64,000 nucleotides of DNA from Pelomyxa schiedti (taxonomy: Eukaryota > Protista > Evosea), in NCBI GenBank assembly GCA_020536535.1, contig JAHLWZ010000231.1, positions 62,001 to 126,000 on the forward strand, in the 5' to 3' direction. The notes beneath the pieces were generated by a model, which saw only the letters and a program-made list of their open reading frames with translations, did no database searches and was not told where the DNA came from. Below, piece after piece: positions 1 through 63,749 of the stretch (position 1 is the stretch's first letter; each line of letters begins with the position of its first letter). The position numbers were made by a program, and so were the translations under genes.

Positions 1-3000
1 CTTCGAGAGGTTATTTTTGGCTTGCCTTGCTGGGCCTAAGGGTGGTTTGGTAAAAATCTCTTGTAGTTGTGCAAGTCCTATTCCTATCTCCAGTCCTTTG
101 GTGGTGGTACCTTGTGAAGATGAACAATGAAAAAAGGGAATGTGGGATAGTACAAAGCTCTGGGTTGGACAGGAGCTTGTTGAATAGGAGTGCATTCATC
201 CAGTAGGTAAGTTGTGAGAAGAATTGCACACAGAGGTCGCTTGGCACTTTATTTTCGTTCAAAACACGGAGAGCTTCATTCAGTATTGAATGGATGTCAG
301 ATATTGTGCCACGGCGGGCTCTTGGTTTGCGTAAGAACGTAAGATTTTTTTGGAGGCTAGGCTTCACCTGTGACTGACCATTGGCTGTGCTCCTGGTTTA
401 CTGGGGACCATATTTTGTTCAAAAATGGCGTTAAAGAGAATTGGCTCAATAGCCTGAAAAAGGGTGAGCAAATTTCGACATCTGGCGGAAAATGTTTTAC
501 CTTTTTGTACTTTAACACGAAAGTGGTGTATGCACAGTACAATGTTTCTCTTAATTTGTGGCAGAAGGTTTGCATTTCATCCCCCAAGCTTGGAGTTGAG
601 GAAGGGGGTACAACAAAGACTTTTTCTTGTTTGCTTAACCTGTTTCCGGTTTAGCTTTGAAGAATTACGATCCTTCTTACACGACAGGAGAGATAGCATT
701 ACGTTCGTTGTAAACTAGCTGGATAAATGACCAACATATATTAAGATTGTAGGCCCCCATCAAAGGCAAGTCGGAATAATTCTGCATCAGCATTTTAGTG
801 GAACCAGTGAGTAACTGAAGGACTTAGGTAAAACCTTTCCCAAAGCACTCAAAGCCTCTATTATGCTGGTGTGTAAAATTGCATCTGTATTGTTGAAGCA
901 ATCCCACTTTTTCATGACATTAATTAGAATGTTACAAGGACGAGGCATATTTCCAGAATCAAAAACAGGGGAATCTAGATGATACAACGCTTGCTTAACA
1001 ATATTAGCCACCTCCAACTGATGAGACAAAGTTTGAAGTTTCTACAGCGAATTAATGGAAGAAATGTAATCAGAAAAAACACCTCCTGGAACTTAGTTTC
1101 CAGCTCTGCTCGTTCTAAAGCTATCTGTGTTTCCAGTTTTTGCCGTAGAGGCTCGCATTGTAAATGTTGTTCGCAAAGCTCAGTTAACCTAGGTAAGTCG
1201 GCTATTTGAAGCATCATCTGATTTCTTTCTTCAGCCATGGAATGACATTCAGACTGGGTTTTCTGCTCTCTCTCCTGGAGCGCCTGCGCTTCAGTTCTAG
1301 CTTGTTCGCATTCTAGTTGAAGTTTCGCAAGTGCAGCGCTGCATTCCGTAATCTCACTCTCAAGCTCAACAATTTTCGCCTTCAAAATGTCAGAATCGCC
1401 CTTGCTTGCCTCAATACTCTTGAGAGATAGCTGAGACTCATCTTCGAGTTGGAAGACTTTTCTCTTGCTTTCCTTGGGTTTCCCTTAGAAAATTAATATT
1501 TAATCGAGGTATAAACCTCTAATTGTACAACTAGCTGCTTATTCTCATCAGATACATTTTGCATTTGCATTGACGAGTCGACCTCCAGTTGGTGCTTTTC
1601 CGAACTCAGCTGCAGTAAGTCAGACTGAAGTTGCTTGTGTTTTAATGAGTAATCTTGAAGCTGTGCCTCACAGTCTTCAAGCTTCCTTGCTAGTTGAGAA
1701 TTTTGTTCACTTAGGGCCTGCATTGGGGCAGCTTGCCCCGAGGTGGCTTGCTTGATTTGAAGTAACTCCTTGGAAAGAGTACCAAATTCTTTTCTACTAG
1801 TCTCAAGAGCATCGTTGAGATCCAGCTTCTCTCTTTGCAGAGCCTCCACTTGAGCCTGGAGGTCCCCAACTTGTGACTGAAGGTGTGCTGTACGTTGCTC
1901 CAATTGTTTGAGCTGAAAAACTTCCTCCTCTTTTTCTCTTAGTTTATCTGTCAGATCTTTCATTTGGGTGTCAATGTCCTGCAGTTGGGACGTTCTGTTG
2001 GCAAGATCTGCTTTCAATTGTTCACATTCTGAGGCTTTCGCAGTTTGTTCTTCTTTGAGTGAGCTCCAATTAAGTTCAGTGCTTGTTAACTCTTTTCTGA
2101 GTGCCTCGATCTGGAAGTCTTTCTTATCTACCTCCTTGGTAAGGTCTGTAAGTTTTGCTGTCTTATCCTCCACATCTCTTCTAAGTTCCACTAGGGTGGA
2201 GGTGTGTGCTGCCACCTCAGAATTAAGAGAATTTATCTGCTCTTTGCAATTTCTCAACTCATTGGAGTCCTGTTCCAGCTTGTTCTCCGTTGAGGCAAGG
2301 CTCTCCTGCAAAGAAAGAATAGTCTTGCTCTGAGTGCCTATTTCCAATTTTGCTTGCTTGTAATCTGAGGACTGTTTAGCAATTTGATCCTTGAGAGCTT
2401 CCACTTGCATTGTGCTCTCGTGAAGTTGTGTGTCCAATTCTGAAATTTTATTCTTTTTACTGTCTAGTAATGCCATGATATCTTTCACTTCGGTGGATTT
2501 ATTTTCTCTCAGAGCCTCTCTCTCAATTGAAATTTGTTGCAGGGCTTCCTTGAGCCGAGTGATTTCAGACAGTTGGGTTTCATGATCAAGATTAAACTGC
2601 TGCTGCTCAGATTGAAGTTTTTCTTGTAATCCACAAAGCAAAGTGTTCTTTTCTTCCAATCCCACACGAAGTTTATCGTTGTTAGCCAGATGTTCTTGTA
2701 TAGACGATTCCTGTCGTGCTGTAACTGCCTTCAGGTGGTCAGTAAGCTCCATTGCAGAATTGTACTTTTGCGTCAGCTCGATCTCTTTGAGATTAGATGC
2801 GTTGGTCAAAGCTTGGTTTTCTTCCTTGGCCAATTTCAGTTGTTCCAAAATAGAAGCTGCTTCCTAAAGGAAAAGCTCAATACAAAAAGAAAAGTAAAAT
2901 TAATGAGTACCTGTTGACTTTCTTTGCAAAGAGTATCAACATTGTGAGCGGTGAGCCTCTCCTTTTCTAACTCCACTTCCAGTATATGGTACTTCTCCGA

Positions 3001-6000
3001 CAGTAGTTTTATGGATTCATTTGTCTGTGACAAAGAATTGCAACTCTCATGGAGCTTAGATTCATATTCTTTGGTTAGCTGTGCAACTATTTGAGTGTTC
3101 TCCTGCTGCATTTTTTCAATCTCGTTTTGATGTTGCTCCTGAGTGGCCTTATATTCCAACTGATATTTGCTGAGAGCGGCATCCAGTTTCACATATTTTG
3201 CTTCACTCAAACTGAGTGCTACATCCACTTCTTGCCTTTCTCGCTTTAATGATTCCAGTTCCTCATGTTTTTTGGAAAGATTGTCTTGTAGAGTAGCACA
3301 TTCCCTCTTGATAGCTTCAATGTCTTGGGAGAGTGACTTCACTTGACTTTCCAATGTCTGAATAACTCCATCTCTTTGCTCTAAGTGGGCTTTCAAAGAT
3401 TTTTTCTTTTCCTTTTCTTCCTCGATCTCCTTTGCAAGTGAAAACGTCGTGTAAGGAAAAACTCGCAAAAAAAAAAAAGAAAGAATGAAAGAGGTCATAC
3501 TGTCTGAAATTTTTCCAGGCTTCTAGCATGTCTGGTTATTTGGTTGCTTAAAGTATCAACGCTTTCCTTGGACAATTTCAAGTCCCGTTCCAGTGTACTC
3601 TTAACGGCATTAAGTTGTTGGAGATCATTTCTTAAACCTTGATTGGATTGAGAAAGTATTTCATGTGACTGTTTGAGTAATGCTAATTCGCTTTCAAGAT
3701 CCTCTTTTTTTCTGGTTGCTTCCGTCAGCATAGCACTCTCATGAGAGAGGTTCACTAAGATTTGTTCATGGTTTGATTGTAGGTCCTTAAAGGCCTCCTT
3801 AACAGGTAACAATGAGTCGACAAGTTGCTGAAGCTCACTGCATTTCTCCTTGGTGGCTCTAGTGTCGTTGGTGGCAATGTCAATGGAAAGCTTCAGAGTG
3901 GATATTTGGCTTTGCATATCGTCCTTATCTTTCTTCAGAGATGCTTGCTCCTGTTCATATGTCTCTTTCAAAAGACTTGTTTGTTTTGTGAATTGGTCGT
4001 GATCGCTTCTCAACTGAAGTAAATTTGCTGTCAACCTCTCGTTCTCAGTACAGAAGTTGTTATTTTTTCGGGATAAATCTTCAAGCTGTGATGTTAGTTT
4101 CTCGTTTTCTTGTGTGGTACGGGACAGTTGCTCAAGTAGTTCCCTCTCAGCAGTGGTACCGGCATTCTTCATGGCCTCCTTTTCACATGCAAATTGTGCA
4201 CGTATTTTTTCGATTTGAGTGTTCTTCTGTGAAACTAAGGTTTCAACTTCTTTCAGTTTTGCTTCCAGAGACCCGCACTCGTCTCTGGATTGCAAGAGGT
4301 GCTGCTGCAATTCCTTGGTATCAGTTTTGGATGAGTCCAGTTCCTTCTGCAACCCGGCTATGCTTTGCTGTAATTGTAGATTACCCTCTAAATATTTCTT
4401 CGCTTTTTTTTCTTCATCAGCGACTCTTGAGGTAAGGCCTGCAACTTCGGCAGAAAGTTTGGAGATAACACAGGAGCCTTCCAAAATTTTGTTGTTCAGC
4501 TCAGAAATGGAATTTTTGTGACGTTCTATTTGTTCTTGACTTGCTTTTGTTTGTTCACGTTCGCTTTCTAGTTCGGAAATGGCCGCTTCCCGTTTGATGG
4601 TTTCCTCACTCTGTGATTGAAGTAGAACTTTTTTTTCTTCTTCAAATGTTCTCCTCATTGCATCAGCCTCGGTATTCAGCTGCTTGATGGAAGTTTCTTG
4701 GCTTAGATATTTCACTTGCAATTCTTCCACAATGGTTTTGAACTTTCCAATTTCTTCTTGCAAGATTGTATTTGCCTCTTTAGACTCGTCCAAGTCGTGT
4801 CTGATTTGTTTCACTTTGTTTTTTACCTTGCACTTCTTAGTTTCTATTTCGGAAATTTGCTTTTGCAAAGCAGAGTGCTGTAAATCTCTCTCAGAGCATG
4901 TGCTTTCTAATAAATCGATAGTGCTTCTTCCTCTTTCCACAGTTGCTTCCAGGTCTTGAACTTGTTTTAGCCATTTAGACTCGTTGGAGTTCAGCTGCTG
5001 TTCAAGTTGAGCCTTTTCTGCTCCAAACCGTACTGTCACTGATATTACCTCTTGCTGAAGCCGTGAAACTGTCTCCTCCGACAATTTCCATTTAGATTCA
5101 AAGTCTCGAGCCTGGGTAATACTTTGCTCCAAATTTATCTGACAGGCTTGAGATTTCTGTTCAATTGTGTGCAAGTTCGTCTCAAAGGCAGAACACTTTT
5201 CTTTGAGGAGTGAAATTTCTTTCTCAGTCTCCTGCTTTCGTGTGTTGATTTCCTCCTCGAGAGCGGTAATCTTCTGCTTTTGAAGTCCCAGTTCCTGTGT
5301 GAGAGTGGTACTTTTGGCACGTTCCTGGTCAAGCTCGTTTATCAGTGAATTTTTGACATCCTTCAGTTCTTCTTGTAGTGTTAGGTATTCCTGCTTGGCT
5401 GAAGAAAGTTCTGCCAGCTTGGAAGAAGCATCCTTGCTGAGGAGAGAAACCTTGTTTTCTAGCTCTTTGCAATACGTTTGTTGTTGATCGCACTTAGCCT
5501 CTGAATTTCCGAGTAGTTGTCTTGCATGTGAAAGTTCTTCGTCAATTGTTTTATTTTGTTGCTGTAGTAATGTGACATCTGCTGTAAGAGCATTAATCGT
5601 TACTGTGCTATTTTGGACTTTATTTTCAAGTCCCTCAACTTGTTCCTGTTTACTGGACAGATCCCGTTCCAATGCCGTTATTTTTAAACCCAACTCATCC
5701 TTCAGTGCTCCAATTTTGAGTTTCTTTTTGTTGACTTTGGCCTCAAGTTGAGTCAGTTTTTGGTTGCCGATGTCACATTGATGCTTCCATTCCTCTAGTT
5801 CAACAGTTTTAGAGGTAACTTGAGCTTGCATATCTGTAAGCTGCAATTTAAGATTTTTCAACTCCTCTGCTTGGGTTTCTTGGTCATGGTGGAGGCTATT
5901 GATCAGCTCTTGGTCTTTTTTCTTTTCTCCTACATATTTCTCTTCCAGTCTACTCTTACTTGCAACTTCAGCCTCAAGTTTTTCCACTAGTGAGGTTAAA

Positions 6001-22973: not shown

Positions 22974-24218
22974 TCAGAAGCACAGCATGAGCCCCTGGTT
23001 GTGTTGTTGGGGGTGAGAGGGTGTGGCTGCGCAGGTGTCCGGGAGCCCTGTGGTGGTGCGCTGATTGCGCATCATTTGTAGGTGCAAGGCTGCAGCTTCC
23101 TGCATCACTTGCTCTTGGTGCTCAGACACCCAGTGGGAGGCCAATTCCGTTTGGGAGAGCTGTTGTTGTGGGGGGTACTGGTTGGCAGCTGATGTGCGGG
23201 GTGCTTTGTATGAGTTGACTGTGGTGTGAGTCACCGCCGGGTGAGAGCGCTTGATTCGCTGTGGGTTGCCCTGCTGCTGGTCCACTTGCGGAGGCGGAGT
23301 AGAGAAGCGAGGAGGGCACGTAAAAGAAGGAGTCACAACAGGGTGGACTTGGTACTGGGAGCAATCCTTGTCCGCGTAAGTCATTTCCTGTGACACCGGG
23401 GATACTGAGGTTCCAGTGTAAAGAGGACCAGATGAGGTAGGGGAAGGTTTGACAGTAGCCGTGACCACTTCCACAGTGGTTACTTGAAGTTGAGGAGATG
23501 GGGGTGGGGCTGGTGTGCTGGAAGGAGAAGGGGAGCCAGGAGGGGTTGTGCACTCCAAGCCCTGGTTAGGTTCCTGGGCTGGTAGACCTGCAAAACTATA
23601 AGGACGGGGGTGTCGGGAATAAGGTGATACCTGTGATTGCTGTTACAGCATCATCATACTGAGCAAAGCTCTCGGGGGTTATGTAAAGATCGAACTGAAC
23701 CATCTTGAGTTGAGTGAGTTCCAAAGCGTTCATCTCTAGCATTGAGACTCCTCCAACTTTGGCGTAGAACTTGTTGGAGTAGAAACTGTCCTCGTAAAAT
23801 TTCAAGGCCGTTACTAAACTGACACAAGGTCAGGTGCGAGTAAGGCTAAGGTTGCCAAAACTCACCACGAAAGAAGTAACCGGTGAGCATTTTTCTCGGT
23901 AAGGAAGAACAAGGGGTTCTTCTCGAGAATACGGTCGATAAAGACCAAAGCGGCTACCATAGTTGTTCGGTTACAGCCACTATACTGCTCAAGTCTATGT
24001 GTTGGGGGGGAAAAAAAAAACAGAAAAAAAAGAGTTAATAAGCGAGAAACACAGTAATACGAGCGATACCGTTTTATGTAAGACTCTAAAGTAATTCCTG
24101 GGACTCGTGCAGCTTCAAAGGCGGTGTTTTGGGGGGGACTTGATTGTACGAAGGGTCTTTGAGCCTCGATAAGACGTGTCAATAGACGCGAGATCTGGAC
24201 GTATATAGGTGACTCCAT
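22974..24218 (-). CDS. PHO80/U-type cyclin with a P/Q/S/T-rich C-terminal tail
   Basis: PGITLESYIKR, ALVFIDRI, NAHRLLL, KFYEDSFYSNKFYAKVGGVSMLEMNALE and FDLYI are the cyclin-U/PHO80 box motifs. GT-AG introns join the pieces. Confidence 0.9.
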
Positions 24219-24941
24219 AGTTCGTTTGACTTGCTACGCTTGTGACTCGTGGTCCACCCCCCAGGGCTTTTTTATTTTGAAGGTTTTGAAACTTTTTGTT
24301 CGTTTATTCAAATAAAGGGAGATGCCGGCAACATCCACGAAGCCCTCGGGACGAAATCCACCCAAAATGATCAAAATCAAGTGTTTGCGCAGTTAGCGGC
24401 CCATCTTAGGACCGGGGTGAATTGTCATTACTTTTAAGGCAGGCTCCACAAACAGGTACGGTCTGGGGATTCTTTTGGTGACTTGGGCTGGTGGGGTTGT
24501 TGATGTTCGTGTAAGTATGGTGTGGTTGGCGCCAAACCAGGGGCAACCAGGAATGTTTTTTGCTCTTCTTAGGACCCACAGGTGTTGTGTTGTTGTAAGT
24601 GTGTTGTGTATTATTGGTATGAGATACATGTGATAGTAGGGTTTGGTAATAATGAAAAGGAAGGTTGTGTTCACCACAGTTTGCCAGCAGTGTAAGAAGC
24701 TCTACAAAGAAATGTATGGAATAAAATAAACTGCAGACTGCTTGGCCTGGCAAAGAAAAAGATTGGTTGTGCCAAAAGAGTTATGGTCTGTTGACTATTG
24801 TTTCCCCCACATACCACACAAGTGCTTCCCTATCAGAACAGTGCTTTCCATGAATGAAACCTGAATGCCCATAGCACTGCTGTTGCCTGTTGCTGGTTGG
24901 TTGTTGGTGACTGGCCAAAAAATCCCACTGAATCAATGACT

Positions 24942-25259
24942 GTGCGTTATGGGGTGGTGGTGTGAGTTGAGGGAGAGAAGGAGGAAGAAGAAGAAGAAGA
25001 AGCCAAAAGAGGCATTCTCCCACCACTACTACCACCCACCACGCCCAACAGCAACAAACCACAATGCCCCCAAAAAAGCAAAGGATTGTGGTGGACAGAC
25101 AACCCACAATGGCAGTGCGTTATGGGGTGGTGGTGTGAGTTGAGGGAGAGAAGGAGGAAGAAGAAGAAGAAGAAGCCAAAAGAAGCATTCTCCCACCACT
25201 ACTACCACCCACCGCGCCCAGCAGCAACAAACCACAATTCCCCCAAAAAAGCAGAGGAT
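24942..25259. repeat. Direct duplication of about 145 bp with a 173-bp period, containing a (GAA)n tract
   Basis: gtgcgttatggggtggtggtgtgagttgagggagagaaggaggaagaagaagaagaagaagccaaaaga... starts at both 24942 and 25115, with only a few substitutions between the copies. Confidence 0.9.
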
Positions 25260-25596
25260 GGTGAGGGGGGTCCACATGATGATGATGGTGATGCATGCTG
25301 ACACAATGTAGACGATACAGCAATGTTGCTGCTTGTGGCGAGGTGAGCTAAATATTAGTATGGCCCACCAAAATGATTCTGGAGTGCCACACTGCTGTTT
25401 GTTGTACTTTTTTTTTGTTTTGATGTAATTTTTTCCCAGCTTTTCAAAGTCCCTTGTGGGACAGCGGTAAAATCTCCTGTCATTGGCAGTACGTTGGACA
25501 GCCGGCAACACTTTTTGTTTTGGTGCCTGTTTGTTGCACACTTTGTTTTGTTTGAAAGACTTTTGAAGGGTCGCTGAAAAATTCGAAAGTGATCAG

Positions 25597-28564
25597 ATGG
25601 CCACAGATCCAGCCACGTTGTTGCCGGTAACGGGTTGCACGGATCCGCAAGATCCACAGCTTCGTTGTTTGTTGTTCCTTTGGCGTGCTCGTCAACACGA
25701 GTTGGGGTTGGTTTCCAGCGAACCGCCGCCACCTGAAGTCGTCGGTCATGTTGTATTTTCCTTCCTTCCCTCACTCCCTTTTTTTTTTTTTTTTTTGTGG
25801 GAATTTGGGGAGGGTTTGGTGGGCTAAAGTTTGAGATTGGTTGTTTACTGTTGCTCATAGAGAATGAGAGTTTTGATGTGTGGAGTTTGGGACCTTCTGC
25901 ACCCTGGGCATGCACAGGCGATGGAGCGAGTGAAGGAAAAGTTCCCTCATTGTTGGCTTATTATAGGAGGTATTCTGGGGATTTTTCCCCCATTTGGAAT
26001 TCTAATTGATGGAATAAGTTCACAGTGACCAAACTACGGCTTCCATGAAGGGCAAACCTGTTTTAACAATGAAAGAGAGGGCTGAAATGGTTAGGCACAT
26101 TAAGTATGTTGATGAAGTGCTTCTGGACTGTCCTTGGGCAGTTGATAAAAGTTTCCTTGATAGTCATATGGTGACCACTTTGTCCTGTATATTGCACTGC
26201 ACCTTATAGTTTTGAAGATAGACCTTGTAGTTGGCTCTGATGATAGCTTTACGAGTAAAGGCAAAAGTATCTATGAAGAAGTTCAAAAGTTGGGGAAGTT
26301 CGTTGAAATTCCCCGCATAGAAGGTGACAATTCAAATAGTAGAAGCTATTACAAGAGTTCACCCTAACCATAGGAATATCTTCTACTTCTATCATTTCTC
26401 GAATTGTTAGTAATTATGATGCCTACATTAATCGCACCCTTGATTGCGGCTATTCACTAAGTGATTTGAATGTGTCATATCTTCGGGTAACATTCGTTAC
26501 TTCCAATAAATAGAAATGTTCAAATATGTACAGGGTATGAGAGTATCAACCTCTCGAGGTGTGAAAAAAGTTATGAGGGGCTTTGGATTTGGTGCCAACT
26601 GGAGGATTAGTGGCTTCACGAGGCGATTTGGTGAGAAAATTCTTCAGTCATGGGCTCAAAGGGGACTTGCAAAAGAACTTGTGTGAATGCATTAGAGACA
26701 AACTATCACTCACAAAACAAAAAAGCGTCTTGCAGAGGCTACTGACCCAAGCTACCCTTCAGCAGCATCAGAGGAAACATCAACTTCGTCTGAAGATTTG
26801 AGTGAAATTTTCCCTTGGGCACTTAAGCAGTGCAAAGAGTTGGTCAATGGTTGGAAAAATGTGGACGTATCAGAAATTTCCATCAAAGTAATAAAAGGTT
26901 ATTTCCTTATGCAACATGAAACGAGTTTTGATTGGTTTTAGGAGGACTTACAAATAGACTCTACAAACTCTCTTTGTCACCCGAGGCGACTGAAAGACTG
27001 AATGAAGCTGCTGATCCGGCTTCTTGTGGTATCAACAGTATAATTTCCATTGTACTCATTCGTGCAGAAAGGGTACCTCAACACGTTCTTGTTCGCAAAT
27101 ATGGCGAAGGAACCGAAGTATTTTTCGACCGCAGTCACGAGCACATTATCTTTAGCAGATTCTCTGATGCTAGACTTGGTCCTCACTTGTATGGCCTTTT
27201 CGAAGGAGGACGGATTGAGGAATTTCTTGAATTGCAATCTCTTACATCAGACGAGGTACCTAATGTGCTGCTGGCCATTGCACAGCAACTTGCAAATGTG
27301 CACAGACTAGAGATTGAGGATTTACCACATACCCCCTCCTTGTTTAATTCTCTGCGACATTGGTATGAAGCAGCAATGCAAGTTACATTTGGTACACCTC
27401 CTAAATTTGTACAACCTGACTTGGGTTGCCAGATGACCCAAAGAAGAAACTTCAACTGTCAGAGCTTGGTCTAGAAAAATTGGGAGGCGAGATAGATGAA
27501 CTTCAAGGTTACTTACGTAAGATTGATTCACCAATGTGCTTTTGCCACAACGATTTACTTGGCGGAAACATCATGTATGACAATGAATCCAAGAAACTGT
27601 GCTTTATTGATTTTGAATATGGCTCTTATAATTACCGAGGTATATTAATACAATTCATAAGTGTGACTGATCCCTGCTAGGGTTTGACTTCGGAAATCAT
27701 TTCAATGAATGGATGCTCGTATATAGTGAGCCCCACGAACCTTGGTTCCGGCTGGAGCCATCTCATTATCCCTCATACCAGCAACAGCATGACTTCTTTA
27801 GCACTTACCTTCGTCAGTATCTGTCTGTTTCCTCTACCTCCCCGACCACAGTAACTTCAGGCGAACCTGTTCCCCCAGCTACAACAACTACTACCACTGC
27901 AACTACCTCAACTACAACAACTACCTCCACAGCAACTTCCGAAGAGGCTCTTATATTATCAAATCCAGAACGGTTTGAACAAGCAGTACAAGGACTCATT
28001 GCTGAAGCTAACCAATTTTCCCTTGCATCCCACATCTTGTGGGCCGTGTGGTCTGTTATTCAAGCTTCTTCCTCGTCTATCCAATTTGGTTATCTCGAAT
28101 TTGCCCAGGCACGAATCAAAGAATACTACAAAAGGAAAAACGATTATCTAGTAGAACACGTTTATACCAAATCCTACTGTGAACCCCACGTATTGACGTG
28201 TGTTATTCATTATTATTCCAGTTTCCAGTTTAATTCCCAATCCAGAGAAACTCCCAGCCCGGCCACCACAGTATTTGTTAGTAATGATGACCACCACTTT
28301 GTGGTAAGCCCACTCATTAACAGTACACAAACATGACAGCTATTCCAGGAGGCCAGATTCAACATTCCGACCTGGTGCAAGCAATGTGGTTACTTTGTGC
28401 GTTCTCCATTTGGGAAACAAGGCTACCGCTGCCAAGGTTACAATACAGTTTCGGAAATAAGACTCACTAACAAACTAAAAGCTTGCGGGATGTGCGTTCA
28501 CCGTAACTGCAAAGACAACGTTGTATCGAAATGTGTCTTCAGAAAGCAAGCAGAAATTTTGTAA
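25597..28564 (+). CDS. Fusion protein: choline-phosphate cytidylyltransferase (CCT/PCYT1-like) + choline/ethanolamine kinase + C1 zinc finger
   Basis: CCT part: CGVWDLLHPGH (HxGH), KGKPVLTMKERAEMVRHIKYVDEV, RIEGISSTSIISRIVSNYDAYINRTLDCGYSLSDLNVSY. Kinase part: [69 protein letters not shown]. C1: H-x12-C-x2-C-x14-C-x2-C-x4-H-x2-C-x7-C after removing introns 28304-28348 and 28437-28481. Stop TAA at 28562-28564. The start codon is inferred. Confidence 0.85.
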
Positions 28565-28648
28565 CACAAAGCCCTCTTGGTTTAATTTAAAATTCTATTC
28601 TCTGAGGAAATCACATACTTTCGGTTTTTTTTTCCCCTTGTGTGAAAC

Positions 28649-58935: not shown

Positions 58936-61900
58936 TCAAGGCATCCAAATTTGAAGTGTTTGGGTGATTTTTGTCCTGCAAGTTGGGCATGTTTGTGACT
59001 TTGGAGTTGGTGAAGAGGCTGTTATTAGGTCACAACATTGCTTGCATACAGTGTGTCCGCAGGGACTGAATGCAATGACATTGTTGCCCATAGGCCCCAG
59101 GCAGACGGGGCACTCACTCGCGGAGGCTGTTGTGCTTGTGTGGGGTGCGGCTGCGGTTGTATCCGGAGTGCTTTTGGTGTGATCTTTGACAATCCAAGCA
59201 AGTTCGGGGTTGTACTGTTGTAGAGAGGGGCTGGAGAGCTTGGAAACGATCAGTGCTTCCTGGTTTTCGTAGGCTTGGTACTGTTCCGTGAGATTTAATC
59301 GCTTGCGTTTGAGTACTTCCACTTCCGCAATTGAGTTCTGTATTTGCTTTGTAATTATTTCAGCTCGGTTTTCTGACAATTGTTTTTTCAAGTTTTCCTT
59401 CATTTCCGTCAACTGTAAAAAGTTAGTTGATCTTGAACAACAAGGATTCTGAACCTCTTTCAATTTCCTCTTCAGGTCATTTGCACATTGACGGCTATCG
59501 CAGAGTTGCTTATAGCTTTCAGACCATTTGCTGACCTGGGAGGACTTTTTTTTTGTGCGTGAAATCAATTGTTTGGTTGCATCCAGAGCTTCATTTGTAG
59601 CATCGAGCTCGGCGTGGATAATCTTAAAAGCATTGGTCAACTCCCCAACAGAAGGAGCATTGCTAATTAGTGCACGTTCTTCAATTTGTAAATCTGATAT
59701 TTGCCTGAACTTGGATCCCATTTCTTGTCTGCATCGGAAAAGAGGTAGAAAAAGTGACTGAAATGTTTTTTGAAGATCCGCAGGAATTCTCAGCATATCC
59801 TCCCTTTCATTCAAGCCCACACCAGTAACACGGTTGGATATCGATAGAAAGTCATTCACTTGCCGTTCTAATTGAGAAACCAACTGCTGAAAATGGTCTT
59901 CTACAACCGCACGCTGGTGAAGGAGATTGTCAGACTCCGGTGTATTTTGTAATCGTGACTGTACATTACTATGTTCCTTTGACAAGTCATCAAGCTCAGA
60001 TAAGCCTTTTTGAATGGCATTGCTCATGGCTGCAACATCATTGCTTTGCTCCAGACAGGTTTTTTTATTGGCCAAATCTTCACGCACTAAAATGAAATCA
60101 CAGACTATTTGCATGACTTTGTTGGTTTCCGCATGAACCTCTGTATCCACTTCGGGTGTGCCAGCTTTGCGGAGGGATTGTGCCAATTTTTTTACAAGTG
60201 GAAAAGATTGGCATTGCTCTTGGATATAGGAAGCATCTTGCTGCACAAGGGCTTGCTGTTTTGTTGCAGGAGCATTTAATGTCCGAATTTCCAATTCCAT
60301 CGTCGTAAGTCTTTGTTGCAGTTGTTCCATTTCCTGTTTTTGTCTTTCACAATGTTCTGCAAGTCTAACATTTTCCTGTTGAGCCGCAAGTAGGTTCTTA
60401 TTCAAGATGGAAACGGAGTCTTGATGCCTATCAGTTAAAGACTTGAGCTCTGCCTCGTTTTCATGCTGCTTTGCTGTTATCTGTTGCTGCAACAGGTCCA
60501 ACTGTTGTTGGCGTGCTTCTAGGTTCTTCTCATTAGCATCTTGAAGACTTTTTCGATCAGAAGTGTGTTGCATTTGGAGTTGTTCGATATGCACCAGGTT
60601 ATCTTTTTGTATTTTTTCTACGGCTAGATTATGTTCTCGTTGGAGAGATTCAATTTCTTCTTTGTGTCTCTCAAGGATGGCCTGTTTGTCATTTTGAGCT
60701 TGCCCGAGGGCTGCACTGATCTCTCCTTCTCGGTTCTTTAATAATTGCTCTTGTGCCAATTTCCATTTTTCTTCAGCTTCTTTCAGAGCCCGTGCACAAC
60801 GGTCTTCGACGGCTTTAATTTTATTTGTCCTCTTCTCTTTTACTGTCTGAATACAAGATCAAATAAAACTTTCCATAGATTATACTTACACTAAGGTAAG
60901 TCAAACTGGCGTTATAGTCTTCCTGGAACTTGTATATCATGTGGATATCCTGAGTAACCGGTAAAGTGAAAGTCTCTTTTCCGATACAGAGTGGAACGCC
61001 AGCACAAATGCCAACGACATTATTCTGCATGCTATGCAATCCGCAAGTATCTTTCACCTCTGGAGTATTATAACAGTCTCTTGGTACCTGCCCAAGCATT
61101 TGACCTAAAAGCTTGGGACTATTATGAGCAAAAGCAATGACCTGGGAAGTGACAAGGACCCCTGAAGTTATGAGGGCCTCTGCAATTGAGAAGAACTTCA
61201 GTATAAGAGCATGAATTAAAGGTGGGACATCATCGTGGACAGTAGTGTTAAAGTCAAATAACTTGGGCGTAACAACTTCCCGAACAAATGCCTCCTCAAA
61301 CTCAGCGAGCTGTTGAGGGGCAAATCTTTTCTCAGAAGCCCACCTCAAGCAATCTGTAAAAACTGTATGCCCACACATAGTTATGCCATCTTTATCCACT
61401 TGCTCTTCTTGTGGGAGGGACATTTGATCTATCCCTTTGAAGAGCCTCACCCAAGTTTTTGGGTCACAAATATCACAGCTACGAAACGGATTTTTTGGAC
61501 AGTGTTTATTGGAGACCATTGTAAAGTGATTCCTCAACACATCCACAGAATTACGACTAATGGGTAGACCCGTCGCATTAGCTGATGTAGAGCATGGTGG
61601 AGGTAGAACTTGCTGGGTTGGAGATGGAAAAAGTGGCTGGGAGAATGGGGTCATATTTTTTGTTGAAGTATCAGTAGGGTTCTTGGTGCTAGGTTTGAGT
61701 GCCTGAGGTACATCTTTTTGACATGTGAATGGAACTCGTTGAGGCATTGACTGCAGTGGAGCTGGAGGAGTTTCATGATGCACTTGGGGAGGAACCTGTA
61801 CGGGAAAACGTGGCCTGCCACCGGGTGCCACATACTGTGGTTTTGGTAGCAAGGATGGAGATTGTAGAGGTGGCCCTACTTGATATGGTAATACTGTTGG

Positions 61901-63749
61901 CGATAGCGTTCTCTGGGGAATGACAGAAGTAGGAGTGTATGGAGGAAAAACTGGTTTATGTGATAGTAATTGGGTTTGATAAGACTGAGGCACTATGGAG
62001 TTGATTTTTGGTGGTTCAATGAGTGCTTGGGGAGGATGCGTTGGAATCCCCTGCACAACATGCTGCTGCTGTGCGTACAAGGGTAGTTGTGGCAGTACCT
62101 GTGGTCGAAGTTGGAGCTGCGGGTGTAATTTGGCTTGTGGGGGTTGAAGGGTTTGTGGAAGTGGCGGTGGAACGGTTTGCGGTTGTGGCTGTGGCTGTGG
62201 CTTTAGCTTCGGCTTTCGTTGAGGTTGTGTTTGCAGTTGCTGTAGTTGAGGTTGTGGTTGTGGTTGCGGCTGAGGTTGTAGTTGTGTTTGCGTTTGCACT
62301 TGTTGTGGTTTCGGTTGCAGTTGTGGTTGTGGCTGTGGCTGTGGCTGTGTTTGCATTTGCGGCTGTGGCTGTGTCTGTGGCTGCGTCTGTGTCTGTGTCT
62401 GTGGTTGTGTCTGTGGCTGTGGTTGTGTCTGCGTTTGCGGTTGTGTTTGCAGTTGTGGTTGTGGTTGTGTTTGTGTTTGCGTTTGCGTTTGCGTTTGAGA
62501 TTGCGGTTGTGGTGGTGATTGGGTTTGCAGCTGCTCCAGTTGCGCTTGCGATTGCGATTCGGATTGTGATTGGGATTGTGGTTGCGGTTGCGGTAACTGT
62601 TGTGGAAGAGGAAGCTCATATTCGGGAGTTTCCTGTTTCGGAGAGTGCACTTGTGCCTGCGGCGGCAGTTTTGGTTGTGGTCGGGATGGTAGATACAGTG
62701 GTAACTGCGTTGGTGGTGGCAGTTGTAGCTGTGGTTGTACTTCTATCGCTGGTTGCACTTCTAGTAGTGTTTTTTGTTGGGGAGGAACTGCCTCCAATGG
62801 CTCTTTGTGCATTTCTTGTGCAACTTGAGGCGGTAAGGGAACCGGGTGCTCTACCATCACTTGATCTTGACGAGGAAGTTGAGTTGGTGAGTTTACAGCT
62901 TGAATTTGTCCCCCAGGGTCGCTTTGGGAATGTTGCTGATCCCTCTTTTGGCAATCCAATACAGGAACTGTTAAAACTGGAGAAGGAACACGCTCAGATG
63001 CCAGTTGAGCGGAAGTCGTGAAACGAGATTCCGTTGGAGGGCGGACTTCGGGGCCAGCTTGCGGGGTCTGTTGTGGAAACGAACTCGGTGGCGTCCCAGG
63101 CCTCGGTGGTGGGGTTTGTGGTGCTCCAGAAGCTCTGAGTTGAACGGGCGTCGGTGGGCCCAGCAATTGATCCCCCCTTACTGGCGGATTTCGCTTTGAG
63201 TTTAATTGTTCTGCAGTGGGAAAGGTGACTAAAGAGCCTGTTACAGATAATGTTCCGCAGTTTACAGACTTAATCTTAAACCTGGTCACATTCAGTGTTA
63301 TTGAGGGGAGGATCTCACCATACACAGATTTGACTGATCGAACGAAAGTATGTTTATCACCTTCTTTTGACAGCTCGGAAAGAGTGCACGCAAACGAGCC
63401 AAGTGCAGAGTTCCTGTGTAAAAATTAACACCGTCACAAAACATATGAAAATTACATATCCCATAGTGCCACTTCCACATTTGTCTCGAGCCTGTAAACG
63501 GCCAAATCTATGTCCACACACGAGGAAAAGTGCTCGGCCTTGGGAACAGGGTCCGACTGCCCACAGTTCGAAGAAAAACTGGACCCAGTGATACGCACAC
63601 AGAGATGAGTACTATAGGCAAGTGTTATTGTCCTCGAACAGTAAGACCCACAAAGACATCAAAAGCACGCACCAGTTTGGCGGTATGTCGCTCTTCTTCA
63701 CGTCCACATTAAAATTAATTTTCAATTTGCTGGCAGGAGGTTGTTGCAT
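58936..63749 (-). CDS. Large protein: possible N-terminal C2-like region, P/Q-rich linker, coiled coil and C-terminal RING finger (putative E3 ligase)
   Basis: C-terminal CPVC..PCGHTVCKQC..CPTCR (C3HC4 RING). ORFs 60821-63325 and 58936-60759 join in frame through a GT-AG intron near 60850-60890. Upstream VEVALWD..LGSFACTLSEL is C2-like. The first exon and start codon are unresolved. Confidence 0.72.
62175..62600 (-). repeat. Coding (QP/QT/QS)n dipeptide repeat
   Basis: Degenerate hexanucleotide repeats encode QPQPQSQSQ..QTQTQTQPQP. Confidence 0.9.

What the first reader, a model, noticed from the sequence alone, without database searches (positions are those of the whole stretch)
25597..28564. 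Kennedy-pathway fusion: cytidylyltransferase + choline/ethanolamine kinase + C1 (DAG-sensor-type) domain in one gene
Seen: a CCT catalytic domain with the RxEGIS..RIVxxYDxYxxRxLxxGY signature, a basic/aromatic segment where the membrane-binding M domain normally sits, a full choline/ethanolamine kinase, and a C1 finger with exact Cys/His spacing. The kinase region has no in-frame ATG before its N-lobe motifs, so it needs the upstream exons. Known: the kinase and CCT catalyse steps 1 and 2 of CDP-choline synthesis, DAG is the acceptor in step 3, and these are separate proteins in yeast, animals and plants. Inference: one polypeptide that channels choline to CDP-choline and is recruited to DAG-rich membranes. 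I do not recall this three-part architecture being described. The C1 keeps Pro11 and the QG motif but has RSPF in place of WGL, so DAG binding is not guaranteed.
Basis: partly seen in the sequence, partly recalled or inferred. Interest (0 to 1): 0.85.

Follow-up and report, generated by a model that had tools for sequence, protein, structure and literature searches.

The report
Amoeba choline kinase-CCT-C1 fusion gene
The amoeba Pelomyxa schiedti and several other amoebae have one gene joining choline kinase to an altered copy of the next membrane-lipid enzyme and a lipid-sensing zinc finger; since the genome also has a normal copy of that second enzyme, the fusion may be a membrane-regulated choline kinase rather than a simple two-step assembly line.

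Summary
Window 25597-28564 is one 14-exon gene of Pelomyxa schiedti (771 aa; GenBank KAH3765158.1, named only 'choline kinase alpha'). It has a CCT-type cytidylyltransferase domain, an amphipathic M-type helix, a choline-kinase-type kinase and a C1 finger. RNA confirms the kinase-C1 splices. The CCT-kinase splice has no RNA cover here, but Mastigella and Echinamoeba transcripts and single stop-free genomic frames in relatives carry the same join.

The genome holds a separate, canonical CCT (contig C557). In nine orthologues the fused domain keeps its CTP-side residues but replaces two phosphocholine-site residues (rat D82, H168) kept in all CCTs sampled. Related tubulinid kinases show a decayed or lost CT domain.

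Best reading (0.45): an active choline kinase that uses CCT's membrane-sensing and nucleotide-binding module plus a C1 finger for regulation. A true bifunctional enzyme (0.35) or another head-group (0.15) remain open. DAG binding is untested. I found no paper on this architecture; bacterial LicCA is a convergent precedent.

The parts
25597..25749 (+). Exon 1, 51-aa N-terminal segment (alternative in-frame donor at 25753); intron 1 is about 110 nt and not RNA-covered
   Evidence: matches GenBank model P0159
25861..26486 (+). Exons 2-5 (25861-25969, 26019-26170, 26218-26323, 26374-26486): CCT-type HxGH cytidylyltransferase domain and helix alphaE. HPGH at 25900-25911; RIEGIS split by intron 26324-26373; D82 to C and H168 to G
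   Evidence: Pfam PF01467; alignment to rat and Plasmodium CCT; tree with CCT 98/93; AF2 model, Foldseek best hit 4mvd E 3e-17
26534..26680 (+). Exon 6: basic amphipathic M-domain-like helices with the conserved FxxxFG motif that aligns to the CCT auto-inhibitory helix region
   Evidence: net charge +9 and the highest hydrophobic moment in the protein; alignments; helices predicted at low confidence
26681..26725 (+). 45-nt GT-AG intron that removes two stops and makes the CCT-kinase join; not RNA-covered in this species
   Evidence: orthologues carry this join in transcripts or in a single genomic frame
26726..28197 (+). Exons 7-11 (26726-26897, 26942-27028, 27068-27391, 27433-27639, 27681-28197): acidic linker, then a choline-kinase-type kinase. 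Brenner motif at 27543-27569; Thr-rich insert near 27830-27945
   Evidence: Pfam PF01633; best PDB match human choline kinase alpha E 9e-60; tree on choline-kinase side; RNA joints
28246..28564 (+). Exons 12-14 (28246-28303, 28349-28436, 28482-28564): linker, PKC-like C1 zinc finger (28292-28534) and stop TAA
   Evidence: RNA joints in three runs of one sample; PF00130 E 1e-13 on P0159; best PDB matches PKC beta and delta C1

Best explanation
One gene makes one 771-aa protein whose working enzyme is a choline (or choline/ethanolamine) kinase, step 1 of the Kennedy pathway. It carries a diverged duplicate of CCT with its M helix at the front and a C1 finger at the back. Most likely the CCT-derived part acts mainly as a regulator. 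It still binds CTP or CDP-choline, and its amphipathic helix, with the C1, docks the kinase on PC-poor, anionic or DAG-rich membranes. The canonical CCT on contig C557 carries most of step 2. Shown: single gene, domain order, intact kinase motifs, conserved pocket changes, a separate canonical CCT, a loss series. Inferred: weak CT activity, nucleotide sensing, membrane docking, DAG binding.
For: Canonical stand-alone CCT in the same genome, with D82, HxGH, K122, W151, H168, D169, Y173, R196, T202 and S203. D82 becomes C/A/S and H168 becomes G/A in 9 of 9 orthologues with a full CT domain, whereas 9/9 CCTs and 11/11 ECT N-domains sampled keep both. The Plasmodium equivalents D623 and H709 line the choline subsite, and H709 coordinates the nucleophile phosphate (PMC6060094). 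Fused CT domains sit on longer branches (0.2-2.1) than CCTs (0.03-0.43). The kinase clade (99/97) also holds a Copromyxa protein with a decayed CT and stand-alone kinases, one keeping the M-helix remnant. The linker holds the most amphipathic basic helix in six of six fusions tested. The C1 is conserved with a PFGKQG loop in named Archamoebae and Tubulinea.
Against: HxGH, D86, K122, R196, T/S202 and the cage residues W151 and mostly Y173 are conserved across the orthologues, which is what an active enzyme would keep. H168 is not universal in the wider superfamily (own knowledge: bacterial GCT differs there). I could not test whether Mastigella or Echinamoeba also have a stand-alone CCT. Expression of C557 was not checked. 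No biochemical data exist.
Confidence: 0.45

Rival explanations
1. True bifunctional enzyme. The kinase makes phosphocholine and the fused, lipid-activated CCT converts it to CDP-choline at the membrane. A weakened phosphocholine pocket is tolerated because substrate is made next door.
For: Catalytic K122, HxGH, R196, T202/S203 and alphaE Y213 are retained over deep divergence; K663A, T761A and T762A inactivate PfCCT (PMC6060094). Bacterial LicCA fuses the same two steps (PMC8590670). CEPT-like genes for step 3 are in the genome.
Against: Conserved loss of D82 and H168; a canonical CCT paralogue at C557; CT decayed or lost in relatives. Fusion alone does not show channelling.
Confidence: 0.35
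2. A dedicated two-step pathway for another head-group (for example ethanolamine, methyl-ethanolamines or another amino-alcohol), with both pockets retuned.
For: The three-domain clade also has Leu/Ile where choline kinases have Gln in the Brenner motif (human Q308), so both head-group sites changed. The C1-less fusion P0006 keeps both that Gln and D82.
Against: The kinase keeps the choline-type aromatic groove (Y333, E349, Y354, W420, W423 equivalents) and falls on the choline-kinase side of the tree (95/89). The CT keeps W151 and mostly Y173. The genome has a two-domain ECT (C892) and an ethanolamine-type kinase (C424).
Confidence: 0.15
3. Two adjacent genes (CCT and kinase-C1) wrongly merged by gene prediction.
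For: RNA contigs do not cover anything upstream of 27136.
Against: No start codon or room for a promoter in the 45-nt gap. Full fusion transcripts exist in Mastigella and Echinamoeba. Stop-free genomic frames of 567-781 aa in three related loci span alphaE to C1.
Confidence: 0.03

Closest known systems
Eukaryotic CTP:phosphocholine cytidylyltransferase (rat CCTalpha, PDB 3hl4/4mvd; Plasmodium CCT 4zcp)
   Same: HxGH fold, RxEGIS motif, K122, alphaE with Y213/Y216, followed by an amphipathic helix; groups with CCT rather than ECT.
   Different: D82 and H168 replaced, D169 variable, M region shorter, fused to a kinase, and a canonical CCT paralogue coexists.
Eukaryotic choline kinase (human CKalpha, PDB 2cko)
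   Same: Brenner and choline-kinase motifs, catalytic D306/N311/D330/E332 and the aromatic choline groove kept.
   Different: Known enzymes are stand-alone and soluble (own knowledge). Here the kinase is flanked by a CCT module and a C1; Q308 becomes L; there is a Thr-rich insert.
Treponema denticola LicCA fusion
   Same: One polypeptide covering choline kinase and phosphocholine cytidylyltransferase, in transferase-then-kinase order as the name implies (PMC8590670, citing Kent 2004).
   Different: LicC is not an HxGH enzyme (own knowledge) and has no M helix or C1, so the fusion is independent and convergent.
Typical DAG-binding C1 domains (PKC beta C1A, PKC delta)
   Same: Cys/His spacing, F3, F8, P11, T12, FGKQG loop end, net basic charge.
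   Different: One-residue insertion; W22/G23 replaced by R-S-P (V-S-P, F-Q-P or Y-Q-P in orthologues); not on a protein kinase or a GTPase regulator.

Membership tests
CCT (eukaryotic choline-phosphate cytidylyltransferase) | HxGH and RxEG(I/V)S(T/S) nucleotide-binding motifs, K122 | tested here: met
CCT | Single CT domain grouping with CCT rather than ECT | tested here: met
   98/93 branch uniting fusions and CCT; long branches noted
CCT | Phosphocholine subsite D82, W151, H168, D169, Y173 | tested here: not met
   C, W, G, S, F in P0159; D82 and H168 replaced in 9/9 orthologues
CCT | Amphipathic M domain after alphaE | tested here: met
   hydrophobic moment 0.56-0.59, net +9, FxxxFG motif; membrane binding itself not tested
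CCT | Lipid-activated CDP-choline synthesis | not testable with these tools
   needs an enzyme assay
ECT (PCYT2) | Two tandem CT domains with an HG loop | tested here: not met
   one CT domain; the genome's ECT is on C892
Eukaryotic choline kinase | Brenner motif, DxEY motif, catalytic residues | tested here: met
Eukaryotic choline kinase | Aromatic choline groove and placement apart from ethanolamine kinases | tested here: met
   (ethanolamine-kinase group labelled by motif only, not by assayed proteins)
Eukaryotic choline kinase | Gln in the Brenner motif (human Q308) | tested here: not met
   Leu/Ile in the three-domain clade; its weight for specificity is from memory and was not confirmed in papers
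C1 domain (PF00130) | H-x12-C-x2-C-x13/14-C-x2-C-x4-H-x2-C-x7-C | tested here: met
Typical (DAG/phorbol-binding) C1 | P11, hydrophobic 20/21/22/24, G23, Q27 | tested here: inconclusive
   P11, F20, V21, F and QG kept; 22 is R; 23 is S plus a Pro insertion
LicCA | LicC-type nucleotidyltransferase fused to LicA | tested here: not met
   Pfam, NCBIfam and fold hits are HxGH/CCT type

The most novel reading that the evidence does not exclude
Amoebozoa evolved a membrane-sensing choline kinase. A duplicated CCT became a CTP/CDP-choline- and membrane-sensing regulatory module, and with a DAG-binding C1 it moves control of phosphatidylcholine synthesis from step 2 to step 1, tied to the supply of the step-3 acceptor.
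Probability: 0.3. Interest if true: 0.78.

Novelty: new variant of a known kind. Interest (0 to 1): 0.57.

Why it matters
In the eukaryotes studied, choline kinase is a soluble stand-alone enzyme and CCT is the membrane-sensing control point (own knowledge). A conserved amoebozoan protein that puts CCT's sensor helix and a C1 finger on the kinase is a natural experiment. It lets one test whether CK-CCT coupling gives channelling, whether the M helix can regulate a foreign enzyme, and what D82 and H168 contribute. It would also be a C1 domain on a small-molecule metabolic kinase. The family spans intact, C1-less, CT-decayed and CT-lost forms, which gives ready controls.

Tried and rejected
Two-gene artefact: rejected. 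ECT origin of the CT domain: rejected. Bacterial contamination: rejected (13 GT-AG introns, RNA joints, amoebozoan orthologues).

Searches that led nowhere:
- Paper searches for this fusion gave no description. The library is limited to open papers.
- The rat CCT structure papers were not held, so the effect of H168 mutation rests on the Plasmodium paper and memory.
- The role of Q308 was not found in papers.
- Full-length AF2 of the Echinamoeba protein was too poor for domain contacts (pTM 0.37).
- ESM Atlas had no cluster with this architecture (uninformative for small clusters).
- The word-indexed homologue searches missed known fusions (P0006, P0015), so the taxonomic range is a lower bound. 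Absence from Acanthamoeba, Dictyostelium, Entamoeba and Mastigamoeba is not shown.
- The search of earlier findings had nothing on this gene.

Full report
Source. The assembly has 52,367,397 bases in 5337 contigs. This matches the published Pelomyxa schiedti genome (52.4 Mb, 5337 scaffolds, 7.4 introns per gene; PMC8887013). The window is contig C231:62001-126000.

Gene structure. Three-frame translation and splice-site listing give one frame from ATG 25597 to TAA 28564 through GT-AG introns of 39-51 nt (intron 1 about 110 nt). Pfam scans of single exons found CTP_transf_like, Choline_kinase and C1_1 in that order. RNA contigs from three single-cell runs of one sample cover 27136-28583. They confirm introns 27392-27432, 27640-27680, 28198-28245, 28304-28348 and 28437-28481, with single contigs spanning kinase and C1. 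Nothing upstream of 27136 is covered, so the CCT-kinase intron 26681-26725 is not shown by RNA here. It removes two stops, and no ATG between the first stop and the kinase N-lobe opens the kinase frame. GenBank protein KAH3765158.1 (P0159, 771 aa, 'choline kinase alpha') is the model of this locus; a 14-exon set reproduces it exactly.

Searches of the window's gene were made exon by exon by reference. My own joined model was never sent to a search tool; exons were joined only inside local scripts to check the frame.

Conservation. The kinase exon's best relative among 1.84 billion representatives is a 757-aa Mastigella eilhardi transcript product with all three domains. An Echinamoeba exundans transcript (P0175, 742 aa) and unnamed metagenome proteins (P0160, P0286) have the same order. 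In loci L022, L024 and L042, single stop-free frames of 567, 781 and 757 aa run from CCT helix alphaE through the kinase to the C1 loop, so the fusion does not depend on splice prediction. Three more genomic loci (L045-L047) have CT exons directly upstream of the kinase. CT+kinase proteins without C1 also occur: P0006, P0015 (MMETSP) and L048. The named hosts are Archamoebae and Tubulinea, so the fusion is probably old within Amoebozoa (inference). The kinase tree is not fully congruent with host taxonomy (Echinamoeba groups with Archamoebae, away from Copromyxa and Pyxidicula), so paralogy or rate effects are possible.

The kinase. Its best solved relative is human choline kinase alpha (E 9e-60). 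The alignment keeps D306, N311, D330, E332, Y333, E349, Y354, W420 and W423, with Y440 to F and Q308 to L (numbering from memory of the human enzyme). It falls on the choline-kinase side of the split from motif-labelled ethanolamine kinases (95/89). The only other clear family member found in the genome, on C424, has the ethanolamine-type EYGG motif. So this is probably the cell's choline kinase (inference; the assembly is about 82% BUSCO-complete).

The CT domain. It aligns to rat CCT through alphaE and into domain M, folds like CCT (mean pLDDT 79; best Foldseek hit 4mvd) and groups with CCT, not ECT (98/93). In rat numbering, D86, H89, H92, K122, R196 (K in Mastigella), T/S202, R208 and Y213 are kept in nine orthologues, W151 in eight, and Y173 in most. 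D82 is C/A/S and H168 is G/A in all nine, whereas all 9 CCTs and 11 ECT N-domains sampled keep D and H. In Plasmodium CCT the equivalents (offset 541, fixed by K663 = K122) are D623 and H709, listed in the choline subsite, with H709 coordinating the attacking phosphate (PMC6060094). P0006 keeps D82, and its H168 depends on the aligner.

A second CCT. A search with a mammalian CCT found a better match on contig C557. It is an intron-containing gene with every canonical residue. A two-domain ECT (C892) and CEPT-like genes (C291, C870) are present too. The fusion is therefore not needed to supply step 2.

Loss series. A 99/97 kinase clade joins the three-domain proteins with a Copromyxa protein whose CT lacks the HxGH region and alphaE tyrosines, and with stand-alone kinases, one from Pyxidicula. 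One of these, P0007, still begins with the M-helix remnant.

M helix and C1. The segment between alphaE and the kinase has net charge +7 to +12 and holds the top 1% hydrophobic moment in six fusions. Its FxxxFG motif aligns with the CCT auto-inhibitory helix region. The C1 is closest to PKC C1 domains. It keeps F3, F8, P11, T12 and the FGKQG loop end, but has one extra residue and R-S-P (orthologues V-S-P, F-Q-P, Y-Q-P) for W-G. The conserved loop implies a function; DAG binding is about an even bet.

Mechanism. I favour (0.45) an active choline kinase docked and tuned by a CCT-derived nucleotide-binding and membrane-sensing module plus C1, with C557 doing most CDP-choline synthesis. A real bifunctional enzyme is close behind (0.35), because the catalytic lysine and CTP residues are conserved. 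A different head-group (0.15) is suggested by parallel changes in both pockets. A two-gene artefact is unlikely (0.03).

Novelty. No paper on a eukaryotic CCT-choline kinase or choline kinase-C1 fusion was found. The nearest precedent is the Treponema LicCA fusion (PMC8590670), built from a different transferase fold (own knowledge). The sequence is public but named for one domain only. I rate it a new variant of known parts, real and testable: interest 0.57.

Noticed in passing
G000:C557 about 26700-28200 (-), locus L041: Stand-alone CCT with a fully canonical active site; the paralogue that changes the reading of the fusion.
   Followed up: partly
window 28646 to about 30500 (+): GH43 glycoside hydrolase gene starting about 80 nt after the fusion's stop; two of its introns are seen in RNA.
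   Followed up: partly
window about 23560-24440 (-): Cyclin (PF08613, Pho80/U-type-like) gene upstream, divergently oriented.
   Followed up: no
window 24934-25090 and 25107-25263: 157-nt direct repeat (95% identical) upstream of the gene, with conflicting, deeper DNA contigs; a repeat or local mis-assembly.
   Followed up: partly
L006 1456-2628 (G000:C476): Intronless 390-aa cytidylyltransferase-like + GHMP kinase fusion of bacterial type (RfaE domain II-like and fucokinase-like hits); another transferase-kinase fusion, possibly laterally acquired.
   Followed up: partly
window about 27830-27945: Thr-rich low-complexity insert in the kinase C-lobe, present in RNA, absent from orthologues.
   Followed up: no
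P0162, P0007, P0008, P0163, P0186: Tubulinid and unnamed kinases nested in the fusion clade with decayed or missing CT domain: apparent secondary fission.
   Followed up: partly
L014 about 2500-3950 (-) (G000:C424): Divergent stand-alone ethanolamine-type kinase.
   Followed up: partly
window 58936-63325 (-): Two long open frames, one ending in a C3HC4 RING finger.
   Followed up: no
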